Shown piece by piece: positions 11,335 to 55,989 of a DNA stretch of 64,000 nt. The stretch is from Ophelia neglecta (Eukaryota): NCBI GenBank assembly GCA_965285935.1, contig OZ260667.1, positions 19,592,001-19,656,000 of the forward strand. The letters are read 5' to 3'. The translations under genes and the position numbers were made by a program. Positions within the stretch are counted from its first letter, which is position 1. The number at the start of each line of letters is the position of its first letter. Below the pieces are notes generated by a model. It had not been told where the DNA came from, made no database searches, and worked only from the letters and a program-made list of their open reading frames with translations.

Positions 11335-13199
11335 ATGAAAGCTCAAAATAACCCAGTGAAACAATAATGAATACAAGAATTTATATAAACGAGTGTGGTA
11401 AACAAGAATGTGAATTTGAACGAAATTTTTTTAAGTACAATTTTTTCAGCAAAGTGCTGAAAGAAGCACTTTTGTGTCTCACTTTAAGGAATTTGTTTAT
11501 GTTATGCTACATGAAACTTATTAAAAATAGCTAATACCTAGGATAGATTATATAATTTATTTATAAGATATATAATTACATAAAACAACAAAAACAAGCT
11601 AACTCAAATTATTGAATAATTTCATTGGTGCTTTCAGATTCATGACATTTAGAAATGATCTAGATATTTGTTAATGCAAATGTTAGGCTAATAACAGTGA
11701 ATTGAATAAAGCGCTGGGAAATAGTGAACCGTGAACAGTTATTTTGTGCTTAGATCTATACTTGCTACATGGTTTGCCATTCAACGGACTTCACGTAGAA
11801 AACCGGCAACGGAGAAAAATGGATTTCAACCAGATCATCGGAGAATCCGCTGTTTGTCAATTAGCGGTTTTTTGCGGAGATAAATATCATTCCATTTGAA
11901 AGCAAGCTTAATGGCGAAAGAGCGAATGAATAGGATCTAGCAGTGACATTTAAGAAATGTTGTTATTATTACTCAGCCTTTTTTGTTACTCAGATCGCCT
12001 GACACACCTTCATTCATGCATAAAACTCCCTGAATAAAGTCAGATAAAGTGTGCTATTGCGTCATTATTATCTTTATGGTATTCTCCAACTATAAGTGTT
12101 CAACAGATATGGGGCCAACTGCATAAATATTGTTAAATGCAATCTTACCAAAAAGAGTGGATTTCATGTATGCCATTTATGGATCTCATAGATATCATAG
12201 ACAACCAAATGTTAAAAAGGCGTCAAAGATTAATAAAGCACACTAACGTTATTGAGAGACCGAAACAAAACTTAAATAATTTAGATAAAATGGTATTTTT
12301 CTGAATTAACCTCCTGTGTTCATTCAAAGGGAATTATTGTTAAATTCTCCACTTAAATCGTGTGAAAAAAAATATCTGAAAGCTTTTGAATTAATATATT
12401 TGTATAACGAAGTGCAGTTTTAAAAGGATCAATCTGGGAACAGCCCATGGTTCCGGTCTTCATAGGCAATGGCTTTAAATGAATAATTGTGTACAGTTTG
12501 TATCGTCGACCATCTAGACCCACTAAGAACCAGATAATACATGTTCAAGTGTAACGTGTACGTTATGCAGCATGCTATCTGGTGCAAGTGCGCACGCATC
12601 TCCTTTTAAAGCTGTAGTTGGCAGCTGACGATCTCTTATAACGTAAAATGGACATGTTTAAATGGAAAACCTGTCATTAATGGAATATTATAACTGCTGA
12701 TAAACCCATAATACATTCTATAAAAAGGGTCGACCTATACCATACAGGTTCAGCTATCCTGTATATACGGGCACTATAAATATCCCCCAAAGTGGGGAAT
12801 TTTATCCAATGACATTTGGTTATTCAAAATAAGAAACAATTGTGAAATTTAATAAGCTTAAGTTAGGGTTCATAATGGAAATATTGACCAATCCATGCAT
12901 CATGTGATATCATATAACCTTAAATACATAGCACACGCCATCTATTGCTAGGCGTCAAAATACACTGCAGTCGGGGCAACTATTTATCAAATTCATCTAA
13001 ACGAACAGTTTTCCATTTTCTCATAACGATATCACTTTTGTGGGAACATAACGAACTAATATATAAGGGTAAGGAGCACAGATTCTAAAATTGTATTATA
13101 AAATGCTTAGGGTACAAAATACTTCATTCTCTATCTACATGTATGTTAGGGCAGTGCTCAAGATATATGGTTTAAGGAGCACGTCTGACAAACAACTGT

Positions 13200-13223: not shown

Positions 13224-13612
13224 TCAAAAACACAAGTTAAGATATAGATTCAAGAGCTTTTCGAAAAACTGTCTGGTACAAAATCCGTATTCAAATTATT
13301 TGAACGACTTTTAGAAAAGGAAAAACATTAGAAATGGTGTAAATAACCCTGAGTTATTTTTTTCTTGAGCATAATATCAAGGGTACGTGTTTAATATTCA
13401 TCACCGGTTATGTGGGTAACAGATACATGCGAAATTACACTATAAGTTAGTTGCAACGGTGTATTCTTGGTCATATCTAACTTTAAAGTGTGCCTTCCTC
13501 TCGACGGCGGCCTATTGAAGTAAACATTGTGTCTGAATGCCTTAATGTTAAAAGCCAACACACGATCATATGGAGATAAACGTTTGATGGTGTGCCGCTA
13601 GAGACGAGTAGC

Positions 13613-15177
13613 ATGTCACCAACAAGTTCTCGCTCTGTGATCATACTCGTGATATTAGCTTTCGTGGTGTCGCTGGTTTCACTTCTCTTGGCGTCGTACA
13701 ACTTCTATCAGCACATATTTAGCCATAATGGAACACGGGAATTTATGGATGCTGCGACATGTACGTTTTCTTTCTGTCTGTTTTGTTATTCTGTTTTCTC
13801 GTATACTTTGAACTACGTATATTGCAAACAATAAAGACTGTAACAGAGCTGATTTCATGACTATTGGTGTGATTAAGACTGCAGTCTATGACATTCTTCT
13901 TTAAGGTAAAATCACAGATCTCAAAGACTTGAATATAAAATATGGCCAAAAGTATAAGATGAGTGTGATATCTATTTATTTGCTATTTTTCAACTTCAAA
14001 TAAGCTTTGTAAAAGACAAATATATGTTCTTATTTGCGAACCATTTGGCAGATATAAGTGCAGCTAGCAGCTTACTTCGCTGCTCCCGAGCAGAGTACAT
14101 GCGATGATGCAATTTAATTGGGTCAGAACAAGGGTGTGCACCTCAATATGGTCCATATGAGGATTTCTATGAGATGATCGGAAGGCAGCAAGCAAGAAGT
14201 TTATATGCTAATCTGTTTTAGTGAGGTTATTTTGAAAGAGGCATCTGAACAGATATTCAACAGAACACATAAGTCCCGTAAATACACGACATCCGTATGG
14301 TTACTCGACCAGTCTTTAGGATTTATAAAGCCGAATCCAAATAATGGCTAAACCGGTAGTTTTCTTTAAATGTAACTCAAAGATAATCTGTATGTGCCAT
14401 TAGGTCACCCATTGCAGGCCTAAACTATGAAGTAGATATATTTGCAATCAATGTCAAGCTGCATGAAAAAAGCCAAACGCTGCATCGAAGTAGTTTCTCG
14501 AATTATCATATAAATTGTGAGCTATAGATTATATGAAGAGAAGAATCGATAAATGGTTTGGCACCATGGTATTATTATTATTATTTGGTTTTTATTTTTA
14601 TTTTTTTTTATATTGTTTGTAAATGCTTTCAGATATTGGGTCTAACAGTTATCCGAAAGGGGGCAATCTTTCCAGACTGGCAGCCGCACATCAACCACTA
14701 AGAGCCACAAATCTGCCTGGCAGCCACAGACCTGGTCCAACATCGACACGTCCATTTCCCGTGGAGAACGTTTTACAATTTTACGATGACCTAAGAGGGG
14801 TGTCAATCGAGCAAAATACAAACATTAATTCGTACAGTATGGTCATCAAGAATCCTGGTTTGTATTTCGTCTACAGCCAAGCCAGTTTTATTATGTACAA
14901 TGACGTTGGTACTTTCCATCATGAACAGTCACGTTTTGCCGTCTACATTTACAGATACAACAAAATATACCCCGGAGTAGGGACAGAGTTGTTGTTTAGC
15001 AGTTCTAATACACCAACAAGAAACAATAAAACCGCATTCGAAGAGCATACCTGTTTTGTGGCAGGATTAGTTCGAGTCCTCTTAAACGATGAACTATTTG
15101 TTAAAGTTTCGAACGACAAAGATATTAGTAGAACACCTGGATCGACATATTTTGGATTGTTTCAGACTGGAGTGTAA
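13613..15177 (+). CDS. TNF superfamily ligand, copy 4 (~230 aa, at least 2 coding exons)
   Basis: Exon 13613-13760 (TM VIILVILAFVVSLVSLLLASY, donor GTACGT, phase 1) joins in frame to 14633-15177 (acceptor CTTTCAG after a long T tract; AAAH..IKNPGLYFVYSQASF..YIYRYNKIYP..FVAGLVRVLLNDELFVKVS..TYFGLFQ). A small middle exon cannot be excluded. Confidence 0.88.
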
Positions 15178-17425: not shown

Positions 17426-18174
17426 CAGCAGAAACTCGTCACATAAAGAATAGCAAAAATAAATAAAAATCCCAAACTCGGTTTGGATGCAGAAATCACA
17501 AATCAATTTGCAGCTGACGTCACTTCCTATGAGATTGGCGGGTACAGGCTGTGACCTGTACGGGTGACTACCTATATATGGATGCGGGAAATCCCGTGTT
17601 ATTACAACAGCGCTAAATTGAAACAAGGGATCCAATCTGCCGAAGTCGTCATCTTGTCATGATCAAGGTTTTGAGCAGAGATCTCCAGTGGAGAGTGATA
17701 TACCAATTTCACATTCATGGAAATTCTCCTAAATATTTCGCGGAAAATTTATTCATATCGCTCTCCAATGTTTACAAACTGATAGGGCAGTACCAACGCA
17801 CCGGCGATGTTCAGGCTGGGAAATCCGGAGGCAGGCAGCACACACCTGACCAGCGCTTGACCTCTGACGTCACAAAACGCGGTAAGGGTCGAATATGGTA
17901 ATATTGTGTTATGCCAGTACGGGAAATGAAATAACCTAAAGTTGCACACCGCGAGAAATAAAGAAAAACGAAACCTATCATGTATTTCATAGCCAAAGTA
18001 CATACCTTCCCTACTAGTTAGCGTTACAATGTACGCACAACGAGAGTACTGGGGAAGCCACTTCCAATCTCATAGGAAGTGACGTCAGCTGCAAATTGAT
18101 TTGTGATTTCTGCATCCAAACCGGTTTGGGGATTTTTTTTTTTTTGCTTTTCTTTATGTGACGAGTTTCTGCTG
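17426..18174 (+). mobile_element. Non-autonomous (internally deleted) Tc1/mariner-IS630 superfamily DNA transposon
   Basis: ~112-bp near-perfect TIRs (17426-17538 and 18064-18174, CAGCAGAAACTCGTCACATAAAG...) with TA on both sides (17424-5, 18175-6). Internal ORF 17659-17901 (LSRDLQWRVIY...LFISLSNVYKLIGQYQRTGDVQAGKSGGR) resembles an N-terminal transposase HTH. No DDE domain is present. Confidence 0.88.
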
Positions 18175-19869
18175 TAATGTTTCTTGATAACATTTATTCA
18201 ATCGCAGTTGAATACGGTTTGTGAGATTGATCAGATTAGGATTCTAATAGGTACATGATAAGGGATCATTTATCCATTTAGTTGATTAATTGAAAGTAAT
18301 GCCTTGGCGTTTTGTACGAATTAAATATAAATTGCGGCATTTCTGGGTTTAAATTGATCCACGGGTGAGCACATCAAATGGTGGTAAAAACCGTGGAGCA
18401 TAATTATTAATTGGCAATAGTGGTTTGTCCGTATAAACCCTTATAAGGGTATAAAACAGTTTACCATAAATAGTATTTATTTAAAACAACGGTCATGATT
18501 TCTGAAAATCACTTCGATACGTGAAAACCTTCTTTTCCGAATTCACTTCTGTAGATATCGTATCATCTTGAACTGTTTTGTCAATATTATTACTCCACGA
18601 GGGTTATTCTGCACACTTTCGGGTTTAAGAACACTTCAACTTTGACATGATGTACCTTTAATGCTATACACAACTCAACATGAGAGAGAAGATTCTAGAT
18701 AATACCGAAGTTAAGCGGATAAGCTTGTTGCCTTAAAGTGGGAATCATTTATAAGTGTGCAGATTTCAGCTTAAAATCTGCCAAATATAAGAACGGAGGG
18801 TGCACAGGGCAATATACTGAGTTCACAACCAACTCCCTGTTACATATAGGAAGTTTGCATTAATTACAAAAATAAATCTTTCGCGTTATGAATAATAGTG
18901 ATGGATTTTATCATTGAAATATTGTTTTTGTAATATGCATTTTGCTGCTTACGGTAACACAAATGAAGCTCGCTCATTTATAAGAATGCTTTCACTTAGA
19001 TATACATCAAATACTTTTTTTAACTTGAAGCCGGATCATAAATCTTGCTTACGTCGAAAAGTCAACAAAAATTCAAGTTATAAAAAGTATTAATGCTTTG
19101 TGTAAAAAATATACACAAGATTGCCGCAATCTACACAGTTTGGCCCATACATTAGGTAGGCCCTATTAACCCGAAGGAGATTAATTAAAAATAATCAAAA
19201 GATGAGCATGTTAGTTTCAGATATTGGAAGCAACCTTTCTGCAAGAACAGGCAAAATGAAACACATATAGTTACGATGATCACTATCCAATAACTTTGGG
19301 GTTATTGGCACTGTGAACATGGAAGCAAAATGTAGTATGAAACCCAGCACTGAGCCATTCATAGGTAGTTACAAACAGAGGTATCAATTATCGAGGAGGG
19401 TATGGGACGCCATTGCTTTTTGGTTCCTTAAAATAACTCATAATAATAACATATAATGAAATGGAAAACATCTAAATAAATACTCAGACAATTGACCTTA
19501 TAATATAGGGCGCAAGCAAAGTGCGCGGGCATTAGTGAATAATTCATGTTGTAAATAACATTTTAGTGTTGCTGACATGTTATAGTAGGCTCTCTGATGC
19601 TATTATATGGTAGAAACAAACAGCACAAATAGCTGGGGAGGGGGTGGGAGGGGGATGTTGAATGTGTTCCGCCCGCCATTGGTGTGGACATAGGTCTATT
19701 ATAATCTTTTTACACATCTCTTATACAGTAATAAAGCAAGACATAAACTTAGGTACAATGGCAATTTATTATTTCACATCACAAATTGTCCAACCCCGCT
19801 TTCCCGCACATTTTTTCCTGTTATATTGAGAAAACTGACTACATCGATATAAAGAGTAGTATTCTTATA

Positions 19870-19915
19870 TCTACAAAGCAGTATCCTGAAAGTCTACAGA
19901 GCAGTATCCTGAAAG
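19870..19915. repeat. 23-bp tandem duplication
   Basis: TCTACAAAGCAGTATCCTGAAAG followed by TCTACAGAGCAGTATCCTGAAAG (1 mismatch). Confidence 0.85.
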
Positions 19916-20336
19916 TAGTATTTAACACGATCAAGTAGCGCCTTTTTAACTTGGCAATTTATAATTTAGTTAAGTTGCCCATTTTAAGAATTATTGCCAA
20001 TTTTAACCATTAAGCAAAGTTTTGTAATTTAGAATATCCTTTTCTACGTGATTTTGGTGCAGGTGAAAATTGTCAGAGATTATTAGTAGTATTCATATTT
20101 TATGTTTTGCGACTTTGCAAGGGGATTCCCCCTCCCCAACTCGAATTCCAGATTGTTATTCAATAAAATACAAGAAATACGCCGAATACATGCACAATGG
20201 TGCGTTAAATCTCCTATTCGTATTTATATTTGCCCTGCAGATGACTTTTTAAACCCCCACACATCGGCCATTTCTAATGCATGGGCTATATAGTTATTAA
20301 ATACATGTTTATGTCGTGTATCCACGCTGGCAGTTG

Positions 20337-22465
20337 TTAGGTGTTTTGTGCTGTTTCTGAAACGAAAGTAATATTCACAGTAAAAAATGTGTAAGAACTG
20401 GACAACGGTGCTTCATACCAATGCTTTCGCACCCCACGCACAACCACTCCTACTGGTTCAAATTGAATTGTAATAATAAAACTGTCTTATTATTAAATAT
20501 ATACATTTTCTTCTAGTATTAAACTAATAATAGCCAATGAATAGTTTGATTTTAGGCACGGATATTATAACACAGTTAACCGTGTTTCTTTAACTGTAGA
20601 ATTTGATGTATGTGACGGAGAGGTTCTTACGTTGAGCTTCATTTTTCCCGGGGTATCCAAACCACTGTGGGTAGTGGACTAGAAACATAAAAGACAGAAG
20701 TTATAATTTTTTAACAAACTTCCAGATGTTGTTGTTGTACAGCAATAACAAATAAAAACATATCTCAGTCCATTGTTTCTAAAAACAAAGGTATAGTGTT
20801 ATTAGTTAAAGTCGAGTAATCTCACTCATCGTTTAAATTTGCGTAGAGTACTTTTAAAATCGATGTTGGTCTTCTAGCTGTTGAGGCGACGTGAAGTTCA
20901 ACGAAATAAGTATCATAAAGTCTCAAGTAGAACAATCGAGTCTCAAATTGCGACGATGAACGTTCGAGTATAGAGTATGAAATTTCGAGTATCGAGTATT
21001 TAAGTTCGAGTAACTTTTGTGCTCGACACTTTCGTGAAACTACGTGTGCCTTTCGCGGAAGTCCACGGACATTTACCCGAGAACTACACTTCTCCACAAG
21101 GTCGTTTGGGAGGAATTAAACGAAAGGCCAAATTAATAGTGTTTATTCGCAGAATAAACACTATTTTCTGGGCTCAATAATAATTTTTAGCGTTGTTACA
21201 AGATTCGGGAAATAACCCGGCTTAACCCTATCGGCCTATCTATGTTTAAAAAATTAAGTTAATCGGACTCACAGGAGAGGATTACTGGCAGTGATGTTCC
21301 AAGAACAATGGCAAGAATAACAACCACAAGGATGATGTTACAGATAACCGTTTTCCTCTGAAACAAAAAGCATCGGTATTCAAAGAACGGAACATAAAGT
21401 TAAGGTATTTTAATTGTATTTAATTACATTCATATATCTCAACATAGTCGCATATTAATATAATTTAAGCTGGATTTTCTTGACATACTTATTTTTACAG
21501 TCCATGACGTTTGGTAAACAATTAGAGCTAATTAGAATGCTGTTGGTACAACAGTCACAACCATAGTTGTAGGGTCGACTATGCATATCTGGTATAACTA
21601 AAACAAGCCCTGGACAGAATTACATATTTGCACAACGAGGCGAACATTGCATTATTCACCAGTCTTGCCCCACATATTATACACCTCTTTTAAATATTTA
21701 GGGTGATGTACAAATAGAGCCTTCCTGACATATAAAAATATATTATAATACAAAAAGAAACACCAGGGTCCGTATAGAAATGAACGTTTTGAATGTAAGA
21801 AGACGATATATATATATATATATACATATATTGTACATCCCTTGTACTGGGCTTGTGTGATGTACTTAAATGTACTTCAAGTTGTGTGTTAGTGTCCAAT
21901 ATTGATCGTATAGAACAATATAAAGTGTACCTGTGATAAAGAATTAATTCAGGAATATTAGAAACAATACACAGGAAAAGAAATGCATGGCGTAAAAAAA
22001 AAAAAAAAAAGTTCAATCATCTAGAAAACAACAAATCCTTTTATAGTAATTCAAAGTGTTTATAACATTTACTAAGATTGAACTATCCCAAACTTGCCAG
22101 CAGAATGTACATTTAAGCACACTATATAATCCAGACATTTTAGGTGAATCATTAATATTCGGTCCAACTAGTTAGCTTTGAAACAATCTACCAATATTTG
22201 GCACAGTAGGCCTATATAGGTAAGAGCATTGTTGAAGTTGATTAAAATTTTACCTATTAAATCTTTAGTTTAATTGAATATGGCAACATAGATGTGTAAA
22301 GGTCACAAGTTCAACGCATCAAAGATACATACTGTCTTGGTTAACTTATTCGTGGTATCTTTTCAAGAGTTGGAAATATTCCGACCTTCATCACAAGCAT
22401 AGCCAACAGACAATACAGTATAAACAATATTAAGATAAAATCCAGCAGATACTTACGTCTACCAT
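20337..22465 (-). CDS. Putative 53-aa single-pass membrane microprotein (4 coding exons), family unknown
   Basis: Exons 22465-22457 (CAAAATGGTAGAC|GTAAGT), 21357-21273 (TTTTTGTTTCAG| ... |GTGAGT), 20678-20631 (TTTTATGTTTCTAG| ... |GTAAGA) and 20356-20337 (CTTTCGTTTCAG|). Phases 0/1/1 give MVDRKTVICNIILVVVILAIVLGTSLPVILSFHYPQWFGYPGKNEAQQTAQNT*. Minus-strand AATAAA at 19765-19770. Confidence 0.65.
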
Positions 22466-23732
22466 TTTGATTGTTGGGGCGTTGTTTTAAATGTAAGTTT
22501 AACAGTATATCCTGGTTTTGGCAGTAGAAGTTCGCCCAGCGACACGGAGGTATGCACCTGTACAGGTATGTTTTCACCTGTACTGCCTTAACACATTCAG
22601 AAGCCAGTGAAGGCATACGCCGTGACGAGGGCGGTTTAAGGTCGCAAATTGACACAAGAGAGGGCCATGTATTTACCATCACATACAAACACCCGAAACC
22701 TCGTTACGCAATAAAAATCTTATCATGGTCTGTATGAATGCCAGAATCTGACGCAGCGCTTGGTACAAAGAACACAACGAAAGGGCGGGGGGGGGGGGGG
22801 GTTATCATAATGTTAGTAGTAGTATCCTAATTTGTTAAATCAGTCATTTTTTAATATGGATACATGTAGCTGTACCTACTTTTGCATTTTAGAAATAGTT
22901 CAACACACCTTATAATGGCGTATTGTAGAATTATATTGAAATCGTATTATAATATGGGAGATTTCATATTTACTATAGTACAAGTAAATTTCTAGCTATT
23001 CTATACTGCAAAGGTTGACAAATAATAAAACTAAGTTGGCTAGAGCTTATCTTTTTATTGGTTATATATACACATGTCCTTCGAGCTACTCGGCATGGCG
23101 GTGAGATAATCACATAAGGCTAAGCGCTTTAGAATATCTTATATAAAGAAGGGTTCCAAACATGACTGAAGTAGCTTATAAGCATATCACATAACCAAAC
23201 AAACGTGTCAATCACTTTTCTATACAGGAGCAAGCCTTGAATACGAGCGCACATTAAAAAATTATGTTTATTTTAAATAATATGCGAGCATCATAGAACA
23301 TATTTTTTTCCAATTTGTCTATAATGTATGGAATTAAGGTTAATTTTAAAGCGTTACGGAAAAAACTAATTCAGCTGGAGAAAATTGGTAATTAAGACGG
23401 TGGTTTCTGAAAAAAGTGAAACCTAGGAGTGGACTGAACGAAAATTTACCAAAAAACGAAAATTGTCGATTGAAATGATGGGAAATGTTCATAATCATAT
23501 ACGATTAAGGATTAATTACAAATGGCGACCTTACATTCAGCTCTACACATTGACCAAAGCAGAAAGTAACACAATTTAACACAGATTACTACATTTTTTG
23601 TGTTTAAAGTTCGTGAGTTTTTATTTAATATTATATAATGTAACACTTGGGTATACATGTAAATAATCATATAAAGTTGAGATTGTTTTTATTTCAAACG
23701 AGCGCCCTGAGTTTCACCTGAGAAATTCTGCT

Positions 23733-26939
<3,207 letters not shown>

Positions 26940-34894: not shown

Positions 34895-55989
<21,095 letters not shown>

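What the first reader, a model, noticed from the sequence alone, without database searches (positions are those of the whole stretch)
20337..22465. Hidden four-exon gene for a 53-aa membrane microprotein between the TNF cluster and SelO
Seen: four tiny minus-strand exons (9, 85, 48 and 20 coding nt) with near-consensus donors (GTAAGT, GTGAGT, GTAAGA), pyrimidine-rich acceptors, a good start context (CAAAATGG), matching phases and a downstream AATAAA. They give MVDRKT-VICNIILVVVILAIVLGTSLPVILSF-HYPQWFGYPGKNEAQQTAQNT: a basic N-terminus, one long hydrophobic helix and a short aromatic/Pro-rich tail. No ORF finder would call it, and I do not recognise the family. Inference: a type II signal-anchored micropeptide, possibly regulating a membrane protein. 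Its DRKT...ILS-bounded helix loosely echoes the TM exon of TNF copy 3 (DRKTKTIYFTLILL...LILS), so it could be a THD-less relative of the neighbouring ligands, but that resemblance may be chance.
Basis: partly seen in the sequence, partly recalled or inferred. Interest (0 to 1): 0.8.

Follow-up and report, generated by a model that had tools for sequence, protein, structure and literature searches.

The report
Conserved four-exon membrane microprotein gene
The four tiny minus-strand exons are very probably a real gene for a ~53-residue hydrophobic microprotein, because a distantly related animal keeps the same gene, with the same exon phases and in the same place between SelO and a TNF cluster; its function is unknown and no RNA evidence was available.

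Summary
Observation confirmed. All four exons, their GT-AG borders, phases 0/1/1, the start context and the 53-codon reading are exactly as described.

The model is more than chance. Under criteria set at its own weakest sites, it is the only complete chain on either strand of the window. Markov simulations give 0.07-0.13 such chains per 64-kb strand.

The decisive evidence is conservation. The closest available SelO relative (62% identity) lies on an ENA contig, L010, with the same order: SelO, gap, convergent TNF genes. The same four-exon gene sits in that gap. Its exon 2 is also 85 nt and 68% identical in protein, and the motif FHYPxWFGY is kept.

Over 37 aligned codons the differences are 9, 4 and 26 at codon positions 1, 2 and 3 (pN 0.19, pS 0.82). 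Introns and the rest of the interval are unalignable.

No paralogue, Pfam, PDB or protein-database relative was found. The spliced peptide was never searched whole.

No RNA runs exist here. The choice between membrane anchor and cleaved signal peptide, and the function, stay inferred. The TNF-relative idea is not supported.

The parts
22457..22465 (-). Exon 1, coding part (ATG GTA GAC), followed by donor GTAAGT. The 5' UTR extent is unknown.
   Evidence: It is the only phase-0 ATG plus strict donor within 1.5 kb upstream of exon 2. The orthologue has ATG GAT | GTAAGTATC at the matching distance, 1141 nt against 1099 nt before exon 2. Both have A at -3 and G at +4.
21273..21357 (-). Exon 2, 85 nt, phase 0 in, 1 nt left over. 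It encodes a basic N-flank and the whole ~23-residue hydrophobic segment, ending ...VLGTSLPVILS.
   Evidence: The orthologous exon in L010 is 13076-13160. It is also 85 nt, 19 of 28 residues are identical with no gap, and tblastn gives E 2.6e-9 within the locus. Two SNPs in resequenced individuals (21337, 21349) are both synonymous.
20631..20678 (-). Exon 3, 48 nt, phase 1 in, 1 nt left over. It encodes the conserved aromatic motif (F)HYPQWFGY and a polar stretch.
   Evidence: The orthologue is L010:13350-13394, 45 nt, same phases, (F)HYPEWFGY. A 27-nt DNA match at 89% identity is the best DNA match in the locus.
20337..20356 (-). Exon 4, coding part, 20 nt including TAA. This is the least certain exon.
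   Evidence: L010 has an acceptor at 13541 that also gives 20 coding nt and ends ...T-stop. A second acceptor at 13461 would give a different 5-residue end. Four strict acceptors are possible in the window.
20357..22456 (-). Span holding introns 1-3 (1099, 594 and 274 nt), with exons 2 and 3 interleaved. It contains a (TA)n run, a poly-T run and a short dispersed repeat.
   Evidence: There is no similarity to the L010 introns.
22551..22583 (-). Candidate conserved promoter element. Two copies of GTACAGGTG (E-box CAGGTG) with flanking ACATA lie 85-118 nt upstream of the ATG.
   Evidence: This is the best local alignment of the 300 nt upstream of the two ATGs. L010 has ACATACTGGTACAGGTGAACATA at -115 to -92. 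Three of 500 shuffles reach the score. Function not tested.
19765..19770 (-). First AATAAA downstream of the stop codon (567 nt). A possible poly(A) signal.
   Evidence: Not conserved in position; L010 has ATTAAA 387 nt after its stop.
23733..24725 (-). Context: the last large exon of SelO, same strand. Its stop is 1.27 kb upstream of the microgene ATG.
   Evidence: Pfam SelO, E 1.8e-69. AATAAA lies 40 nt after its stop.
14623..15177 (+). Context: THD exon of the nearest TNF ligand, convergent with the microgene.
   Evidence: Pfam TNF, E 4.9e-17.

Best explanation
This is a real, single-copy, protein-coding gene of four exons on the minus strand. It has its own start 1.27 kb downstream of SelO and encodes a ~53-residue protein.

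Shown: the exon-intron structure, frame and sequence are under purifying selection at the protein level.

Inferred: the protein is a single-pass membrane microprotein. It would have a short basic N-terminus in the cytosol, a ~23-residue helix, and a ~22-residue luminal or extracellular tail. The tail begins with an interfacial aromatic belt, FHYPxWFGY.

It is so short that the hydrophobic segment would leave the ribosome only at termination. It would then be inserted after translation, like a tail-anchored protein.

The invariant block is the outer half of the helix, which contains Gly and Pro, plus the aromatic belt: VLGT-x-LPVILSFHYP-x-WFGY. That pattern points to a specific helix-to-helix and juxtamembrane contact. 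The likeliest role is a small accessory or regulatory subunit of a larger membrane protein or complex. The partner and the compartment are unknown.
For: Structure and letters verified. It is the only complete strict-site chain in the window, against 0.07-0.13 per strand in simulations.

Syntenic orthologue in L010:
- Same strand as SelO, 2.1 kb after its stop, before convergent TNF genes.
- Exon 1 is ATG GAT | GTAAGT.
- Exon 2 has the identical length of 85 nt.
- Exon 3 has the same phases.
- It has a short terminal exon.
- The model is 51 codons.

Coding signature over 37 aligned codons: differences are 9, 4 and 26 at codon positions 1, 2 and 3, with pN 0.19 against pS 0.82, which is saturated. 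Replacements are conservative: R/K, T/S, I/V/L, S/A.

Nothing else in the 8.5-kb versus 4.5-kb interval is conserved. Both exonic SNPs in three resequenced individuals are synonymous.

Kyte-Doolittle 19-residue maximum is 3.0. The N-flank is net positive in both species. The C-tail is neutral in the window and acidic in L010 (sequence). The N-flank D-[RK]-K-[ST]-V-I is itself conserved, which is unusual for a signal-peptide n-region (inference).
Against: - There is no expression evidence. Only DNA runs hold the stretch, and no spliced form was seen.
- Only one orthologue was found. The gene is absent from the 10 kb downstream of SelO in two more distant relatives, where synteny is broken.
- Exon 4 is ambiguous.
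- The antisense frame shares wobble positions and also looks conserved, at 59%. Codon periodicity alone therefore does not fix the strand. The strand rests on splice sites, phases, conservative replacements and the 32-codon limit of the antisense frame.
- The hydrophobic segment can also be read as n, h (12 residues) and c regions of a cleavable signal peptide.
- Topology, partner and function are untested.
Confidence: 0.55

Rival explanations
1. Same gene, different product: a tiny secretory precursor. The first ~25-31 residues act as a cleavable signal peptide. The n-region ends at residue ~9, the h-region is 12 aliphatic residues, and the c-region is G-T-S/A or ...V-I-L-S. Cleavage would release a 22-28-residue peptide whose invariant core is (LPVILS)FHYPxWFGY. 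This would be a signalling or defence peptide beside an immune-gene cluster.
For: Helix-breaking Gly and Pro follow a 12-residue aliphatic core. Small residues sit at -3/-1 in both species: G-T-S and G-T-A, or I-L-S. The strongest conservation starts exactly there and runs into exon 3. The signal part and the peptide part lie in separate exons, as in many peptide precursors (general knowledge). In the window, G-K follows the motif, which could serve as an amidation and cleavage site.
Against: The uninterrupted apolar stretch is about 23 residues, which is the length of an anchor and long for a signal peptide. The N-flank and h-region are more conserved (68% over the exon) than signal peptides usually are at saturated synonymous divergence. 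The G-K is not conserved in L010, and neither species has dibasic sites. No signal-peptide predictor was available here.
Confidence: 0.25
2. The conserved exons 2-3 belong to a longer transcript. They could be alternative 3' exons of SelO, which lies on the same strand 1.3 kb upstream in both species, giving a membrane-anchored isoform. Or they could be part of a larger gene whose other exons I did not see. The 53-residue product would then be an artefact of the model.
For: They lie on the same strand as SelO and immediately downstream of it in both species. Exon 2 starts in phase 0 and has no ATG of its own, so it needs an upstream exon. Exons 1 and 4 are too short to prove by similarity.
Against: A phase-0 ATG micro-exon with a GTAAGTATC donor, A at -3 and G at +4 is present at the same distance (1.1 kb) in both species, giving M-(V)-D. 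AATAAA follows the SelO stop by 40 nt in the window and 81 nt in L010. A conserved element lies about 100 nt upstream of both ATGs. No other conserved coding piece exists between SelO and TNF on either strand. In both species a stop follows within 5-6 codons after either candidate last acceptor (second L010 acceptor read by eye).
Confidence: 0.08
3. It is a THD-less relative of the neighbouring TNF ligands, a duplicated cytoplasmic and transmembrane exon that lost its receptor-binding domain.
For: It is linked to a TNF cluster in two species. D-R-K-T precedes both helices and ...ILS ends both in the window.
Against: The local alignment to the TNF copy-3 TM exon scores 31. That score is reached by 95 of 2000 shuffles after picking the best of four copies. 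The orthologue shows nothing (1349 of 2000). A profile of exon 2 finds only itself in the whole genome. The gene is on the opposite strand from the TNF genes in both species.
Confidence: 0.03
4. It is not a gene: a chance chain of splice-like sites, or a conserved non-coding element.
For: There is no RNA evidence. The site thresholds were set after the fact. T-rich DNA readily encodes hydrophobic frames. The database searches found no relatives.
Against: Three-periodic divergence: 26 of 39 differences fall at wobble positions. The boundaries of conservation coincide with the splice sites. Exon length and phases are identical in a relative whose introns are unalignable.
Confidence: 0.04

Closest known systems
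Single-pass transmembrane microproteins that regulate larger membrane proteins: sarcolamban, phospholamban, sarcolipin, myoregulin and DWORF on SERCA; Sloth1/2 and Brawnin in the mitochondrial inner membrane; Hemotin/stannin. Listed in the review PMC13240139.
   Same: The size class is about 30-90 residues. The body is one hydrophobic helix. There is a short charged cytosolic N-flank. The sequence is constrained despite its small size, and ordinary annotation easily misses such genes. The expected mode of action is helix-to-helix contact with a partner.
   Different: No sequence or profile similarity to any of them. This protein has a conserved 22-residue tail after the helix, starting with FHYPxWFGY, whereas the SERCA peptides end within a few residues of the helix. 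The intramembrane Asn of the window copy is Ile in the orthologue. The gene is split into four exons with 9-nt and 20-nt coding ends, rather than being a single small ORF in a 'non-coding' RNA.
Tail-anchored membrane proteins (a class defined by targeting, not by homology)
   Same: The single hydrophobic segment ends about 22 residues from the C-terminus of a 53-residue chain. It cannot emerge from the ribosome before termination, so post-translational insertion is expected (inference from established knowledge).
   Different: Classical tail-anchored proteins carry a functional cytosolic N-domain. Here only 6-9 residues precede the helix, and the conserved polar part is on the far side of the membrane.
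TNF superfamily ligands (neighbouring genes)
   Same: Type II layout of a short basic N-terminus followed by a helix. Physical linkage in two species.
   Different: No TNF homology domain. No significant similarity of the helix exon. Opposite strand.
Small secretory peptide precursors translocated after translation (for example insect cecropin or melittin precursors; recalled from memory, not tested here)
   Same: A very short precursor with an N-terminal hydrophobic segment followed by a short conserved peptide.
   Different: The hydrophobic stretch has anchor length. There are no conserved basic processing sites.

Membership tests
Transmembrane microprotein (functional class: under 100 residues, one helix, translated and selected) | Complete ORF under 100 codons with start and stop | tested here: met
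   53 codons in the window and 51 in L010, from spliced models.
Transmembrane microprotein (functional class: under 100 residues, one helix, translated and selected) | One hydrophobic segment long enough to span a bilayer | tested here: met
   About 23 consecutive apolar residues in both species. Kyte-Doolittle 19-residue maximum is 3.0.
Transmembrane microprotein (functional class: under 100 residues, one helix, translated and selected) | Purifying selection on the protein sequence | tested here: met
   Differences by codon position are 9/4/26 of 37. pN is 0.19 against pS 0.82. Two of two population SNPs are synonymous.
Transmembrane microprotein (functional class: under 100 residues, one helix, translated and selected) | Transcription, splicing and translation observed | not testable with these tools
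   No RNA run holds the stretch. The three holders are DNA contigs without joints.
SERCA-regulating micropeptides (phospholamban, sarcolipin, sarcolamban, myoregulin, DWORF) | Match to the family profiles | tested here: not met
   Pfam scans of the exon-2 and exon-3 frames of both species give no such hit at E up to 10. Only single exons were scanned.
SERCA-regulating micropeptides (phospholamban, sarcolipin, sarcolamban, myoregulin, DWORF) | Helix at the extreme C-terminus with a luminal tail of only a few residues | tested here: not met
   21-22 residues follow the helix, and their first nine are nearly invariant.
SERCA-regulating micropeptides (phospholamban, sarcolipin, sarcolamban, myoregulin, DWORF) | Conserved Asn in the cytosolic half of the helix (feature recalled from the literature) | tested here: not met
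   Asn in the window copy aligns with Ile in L010.
TNF superfamily | TNF homology domain (PF00229) | tested here: not met
   No THD-like frame on the minus strand between 15177 and 20337. No further conserved coding piece in the interval. Pfam is blank.
TNF superfamily | Significant similarity of the N-terminal and transmembrane exon to TNF paralogues | tested here: not met
   95 of 2000 shuffles for the window and 1349 of 2000 for the orthologue. The whole-genome profile search finds only itself.
Secretory peptide precursor | Cleavable signal peptide (short h-region, small residues at -3/-1) | tested here: inconclusive
   G-T-S / G-T-A and I-L-S fit the -3/-1 rule, but the apolar stretch is 23 residues. 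No predictor was available.
Secretory peptide precursor | Conserved basic processing or amidation sites | tested here: not met
   G-K occurs only in the window copy. Neither copy has a dibasic site.

The most novel reading that the evidence does not exclude
This is the founding member of an unrecognised, lineage-restricted family of microproteins. The family would be held next to a TNF-ligand cluster over a long evolutionary distance because it works with those ligands, for example as a membrane partner or a secreted modulator of TNF-type signalling. Its gene architecture (four exons for ~50 codons, with 6-9 coding nt in the first) makes the whole family invisible to routine annotation.
Probability: 0.1. 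Interest if true: 0.7.

Novelty: new member of a known kind. Interest (0 to 1): 0.5.

Why it matters
This is a worked example of a selected protein-coding gene that ORF finders miss. Its coding sequence is only 162 nt, spread over 2.1 kb in four exons, and no single exon holds more than 28 codons. Most homology-based pipelines would also be expected to miss it, although I could not check whether this genome's own annotation has it.

The two-species comparison turns a model read by eye into a testable gene with a defined invariant motif, VLGT-x-LPVILSFHYP-x-WFGY. If the protein is a membrane accessory subunit or a secreted peptide, that motif is the handle for finding its partner.

The conserved position between SelO and a TNF cluster gives a simple synteny rule for finding further members in new assemblies of this poorly sampled animal lineage.

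Tried and rejected
- **RNA evidence.** The one run search returned only three DNA data sets of one sample. Laying them showed even coverage over the introns and no joints.
- **Protein word searches.** I searched with the 46-residue open frame around exon 2, and with the two-species alignment. Both found nothing.
- **Full HMMER scan.** The scan of 1.84 billion representatives with the exon-2 profile returned one hit: a spurious 482-residue multi-helix protein matched over 12 positions.
- **Family and structure libraries.** Pfam and PDB sequence searches of the single exons gave only noise: CcmF_C at E 0.03, and photosystem small subunits at E above 1.
- **Paralogues in the own genome.** Searches by DNA, protein, profile and exon-3 pattern found only the locus itself, plus a short dispersed repeat in intron 2.
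- **Metagenome scans.** The exon-2 patterns gave no relative. The exon-3 pattern found bacterial enzymes that share the octapeptide HYPEWFGY by construction, and one unexplained contig, L019.
- **Other SelO loci.**
  - L011 and L013 have 10 kb downstream but no gene and no TNF neighbours.
  - L012, L022 and L023 end too soon to tell.
  - Three contigs (those of P0009, P0051 and P0002) came without DNA.
- **TNF kinship.** Rejected.
- **Antisense coding.** Considered because the antisense frame is also open and 59% conserved. I rejected it for four reasons: it shares wobble positions with the sense frame, it is closed after 32 codons, it lacks splice sites at the conservation boundaries, and its replacements are radical.
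- **COX14 resemblance.** The motif [FY]HY-x-QW recalls COX14 from memory. It could not be tested and is not claimed.
- **Left out by the operators' rule.** No search, family scan or fold was run with the joined (spliced) peptide. All searches were exon by exon, by reference.
Full report
**What is in the sequence**

Reading 20200-22600 on the minus strand and rebuilding the model from coordinates confirms every letter of the finding.
- Exon 1 has a 9-nt coding part, 22465-22457, followed by GTAAGT.
- Exon 2 is 85 nt, 21357-21273, between ...ctttttgtttcag and GTGAGT.
- Exon 3 is 48 nt, 20678-20631, between ...tatgtttctag and GTAAGA.
- Exon 4 has a 20-nt coding end, 20356-20337, after ...ctttcgtttcag.
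- Phases are 0, 1 and 1, and the total is 53 codons.

The neighbours are as stated. The last SelO exon lies on the same strand and ends at 23733. The nearest TNF homology-domain exon lies on the other strand and ends at 15177. The first AATAAA after the stop is 567 nt away.

**Is it more than chance?**

I set site criteria at the candidate's own weakest sites. Donors had to match GT[AG]AG[TA]. Acceptors had to be YAG after at least 11 of 15 pyrimidines.

I then enumerated every chain of ATG-exon, two internal exons and a terminal acceptor on both strands of the window. The candidate is the only complete chain, and it has only one admissible first exon. The same filter picks up known real exons, for example those of a T-box gene.

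Markov order-3 and order-5 simulations give 0.07-0.13 chains per 64-kb strand. When a strongly hydrophobic 19-mer is also required, they give 0 and 1 in 150 simulated strands. The thresholds were chosen after the fact and the scan covers many windows. This alone would leave chance open.

**Expression**

The single run search found three data sets of one sample, none recorded as RNA. Laid on 19800-23000 they cover introns and exons alike and show no joints. They are genomic DNA and say nothing about splicing.

They do give polymorphisms. About 50 SNPs and 9 indels fall in 3.2 kb. Two SNPs fall in the exons (21337 and 21349), and both are synonymous third-position changes. That is weak support, roughly 1 in 15 by chance.

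**Conservation: the decisive result**

The large last exon of SelO was used as a handle. Its best relative in 5.8 billion proteins is only 62% identical (P0001), and everything else is 56% or less.

In a tree of the same SelO region the window and P0001 are sisters (SH-aLRT 95). Their path length is 0.72 changes per site. That is longer than Lottia to Patella in the same tree. They sit among unnamed ENA and NCBI assemblies, apart from the molluscs, Lingula, Acanthaster and chordates.

The contig that encodes P0001 is L010. It keeps the same gene order: SelO, a 4.5-kb gap, then two convergent TNF genes.

Within that gap, on the SelO strand, tblastn with the exon-2 peptide gives one outstanding hit, L010:13076-13159. 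It has 19 of 28 identical residues and no gap, with E 2.6e-9 in the locus. The best DNA match of the whole interval is the start of exon 3.

Reading the DNA shows the full orthologous gene:
- Exon 1 is ATG GAT followed by GTAAGTATC at 11929, 1141 nt before exon 2 (1099 nt in the window).
- Exon 2 is 13076-13160. It is again exactly 85 nt, between ...ttgtctttcag and GTAAGA.
- Exon 3 is 13350-13394, 45 nt, with the same phases, and encodes (F)HYPEWFGY...
- A short last exon follows.

The model has 51 codons. Of the four strict donors between the SelO stop and exon 2 in L010, two follow a phase-0 ATG. One of them gives M-D, matching M-V-D in the window.

**Coding signature**

Over the 37 codons that align without gaps, the two species differ at 9 first, 4 second and 26 third positions. 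pN is 0.19 and pS is 0.82, which is saturated. Introns are unalignable.

I compared every open piece of at least 12 codons in the 8.5-kb window interval with the L010 interval. Only exons 2 and 3 stand out. The conservation boundaries coincide with the splice sites.

One caveat applies. The antisense frame of exon 2 shares its wobble positions with the sense frame, so it also looks conserved, at 59% against 68%. I reject the antisense reading for four reasons:
- It is closed after 32 codons.
- It has no AG/GT at the conservation boundaries.
- Its second positions would then be the more variable ones.
- Its replacements are radical, whereas the sense replacements are R/K, T/S, I/V/L and S/A.

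**What the protein looks like**

Both copies begin M-(V)-D-[RK]-K-[ST]-V-I. About 23 apolar residues follow, and then a polar tail of 21-22 residues.

The invariant block is VLGT-x-LPVILSFHYP-x-WFGY. This is the last third of the apolar stretch, containing Gly and Pro, plus an aromatic run encoded across the exon 2/3 junction.

The N-flank is net positive in both copies. The tail is neutral in the window and acidic in L010. By the positive-inside rule this favours N-terminus inside and tail outside.

The chain is so short that the apolar segment would still be in the ribosomal tunnel at termination. Insertion or translocation must therefore be post-translational. This is inference from established knowledge.

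**Relatives and families**

The gene is single-copy with no paralogue in its 762-Mb genome. Every database search was blank:
- Word-based searches with the exon-2 open frame and with the two-species alignment found nothing.
- The full scan of 1.84 billion representatives gave one spurious hit.
- Pfam and PDB searches were blank.
- Two metagenome scans returned only bacterial enzymes that share the searched octapeptide, plus one unexplained contig.

More distant SelO loci either lack the gene and the TNF neighbours (L011, L013) or end too soon (L012, L022, L023).

The joined peptide was never searched, scanned or folded. 'No known relatives' therefore means 'none detectable from the helix exon or the 15-residue exon alone'. 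I also cannot tell whether this genome's own annotation already lists the gene.

**How it most likely works**

My best reading is a single-pass membrane microprotein that acts as a small accessory subunit. Three observations support it:
- The apolar stretch has anchor length.
- The cytosolic flank is conserved.
- The invariance is concentrated in one half of the helix and the adjoining aromatic belt.

This is the pattern of microproteins that act through helix-to-helix contact with a larger membrane protein (class reviewed in PMC13240139). It is not a member of the SERCA-peptide families. There is no profile match, the conserved tail is long, and the intramembrane Asn is not conserved.

The main rival is a cleavable signal peptide, cut after G-T-S/A or I-L-S, that releases a short peptide with the same invariant core. 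I give it about one chance in four.

A longer transcript, for instance alternative SelO 3' exons, is made unlikely by four things:
- The conserved ATG micro-exon.
- The poly(A) signals just after the SelO stop in both species.
- A conserved E-box-containing element about 100 nt upstream of both ATGs (3 of 500 shuffles reach its score).
- The absence of any other conserved coding piece in the interval.

The TNF-relative idea fails its test.

**Verdict**

The gene is very probably real (about 0.9) and encodes a selected protein of about 50 residues. The family is new to the databases I could reach, within the known class of hydrophobic microproteins. Topology, partner, compartment and expression remain to be shown.

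Noticed in passing
L010:8734-18240, compared with window 3278-26939: The order SelO, then the microgene, then convergent TNF ligand genes is kept in a relative whose SelO is only 62% identical. The block is absent downstream of SelO in the two more distant loci that could be read (L011, L013).
   Followed up: partly
window 22551-22583 (-) and L010:11813-11836 (+): A conserved upstream element with E-box CAGGTG (GTACAGGTG flanked by ACATA) lies about 100 nt before both start codons. It is duplicated and partly palindromic in the window. Three of 500 shuffles reach the alignment score.
   Followed up: partly
window 37223-39848 (-): Exons of a T-box transcription factor gene. The exon at 39333-39485 hits Pfam T-box at E 3.9e-16. 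The candidates at 37223-37290 and 39732-39848 have strict splice sites.
   Followed up: partly
window 49568-52607 (-): A non-LTR retrotransposon with a reverse transcriptase (RVT_1, E 1e-28) and a weak endonuclease match. It is read in several overlapping frames, so it is probably frameshifted.
   Followed up: partly
window 20935-21012 (intron 2): A short dispersed repeat (units like ACTCGA...TACTCGA) with at least 20 copies at 77-89% identity on several chromosomes.
   Followed up: no
window 21797-21837 and 21985-22019 (intron 1): A (TA)n microsatellite and a poly-T run. Contigs of the resequencing runs break there.
   Followed up: no
window 23733-23750 (-): SelO ends ...V-S-C-S-S with an ordinary Cys codon at the antepenultimate position, where selenoprotein O carries selenocysteine in some animals (recalled from memory). 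This would make it a Cys form.
   Followed up: no
window 17659-17901 (+): An 80-codon ORF that looks like the helix-turn-helix N-terminus of a Tc1/mariner-type transposase. Pfam gave no hit at E 0.01.
   Followed up: partly
L019:11110-11139 (-): A metagenome contig (GC 0.43) encodes HYPEWFGYIE, identical to ten residues of the L010 exon 3. It has no acceptor site before it and no exon-2-like frame nearby. Probably chance.
   Followed up: partly
window 19800-23000: The three resequenced data sets carry two or more haplotypes about 1.5-2.5% apart, with many indels in the introns. One is a 26-nt insertion after 20195.
   Followed up: no
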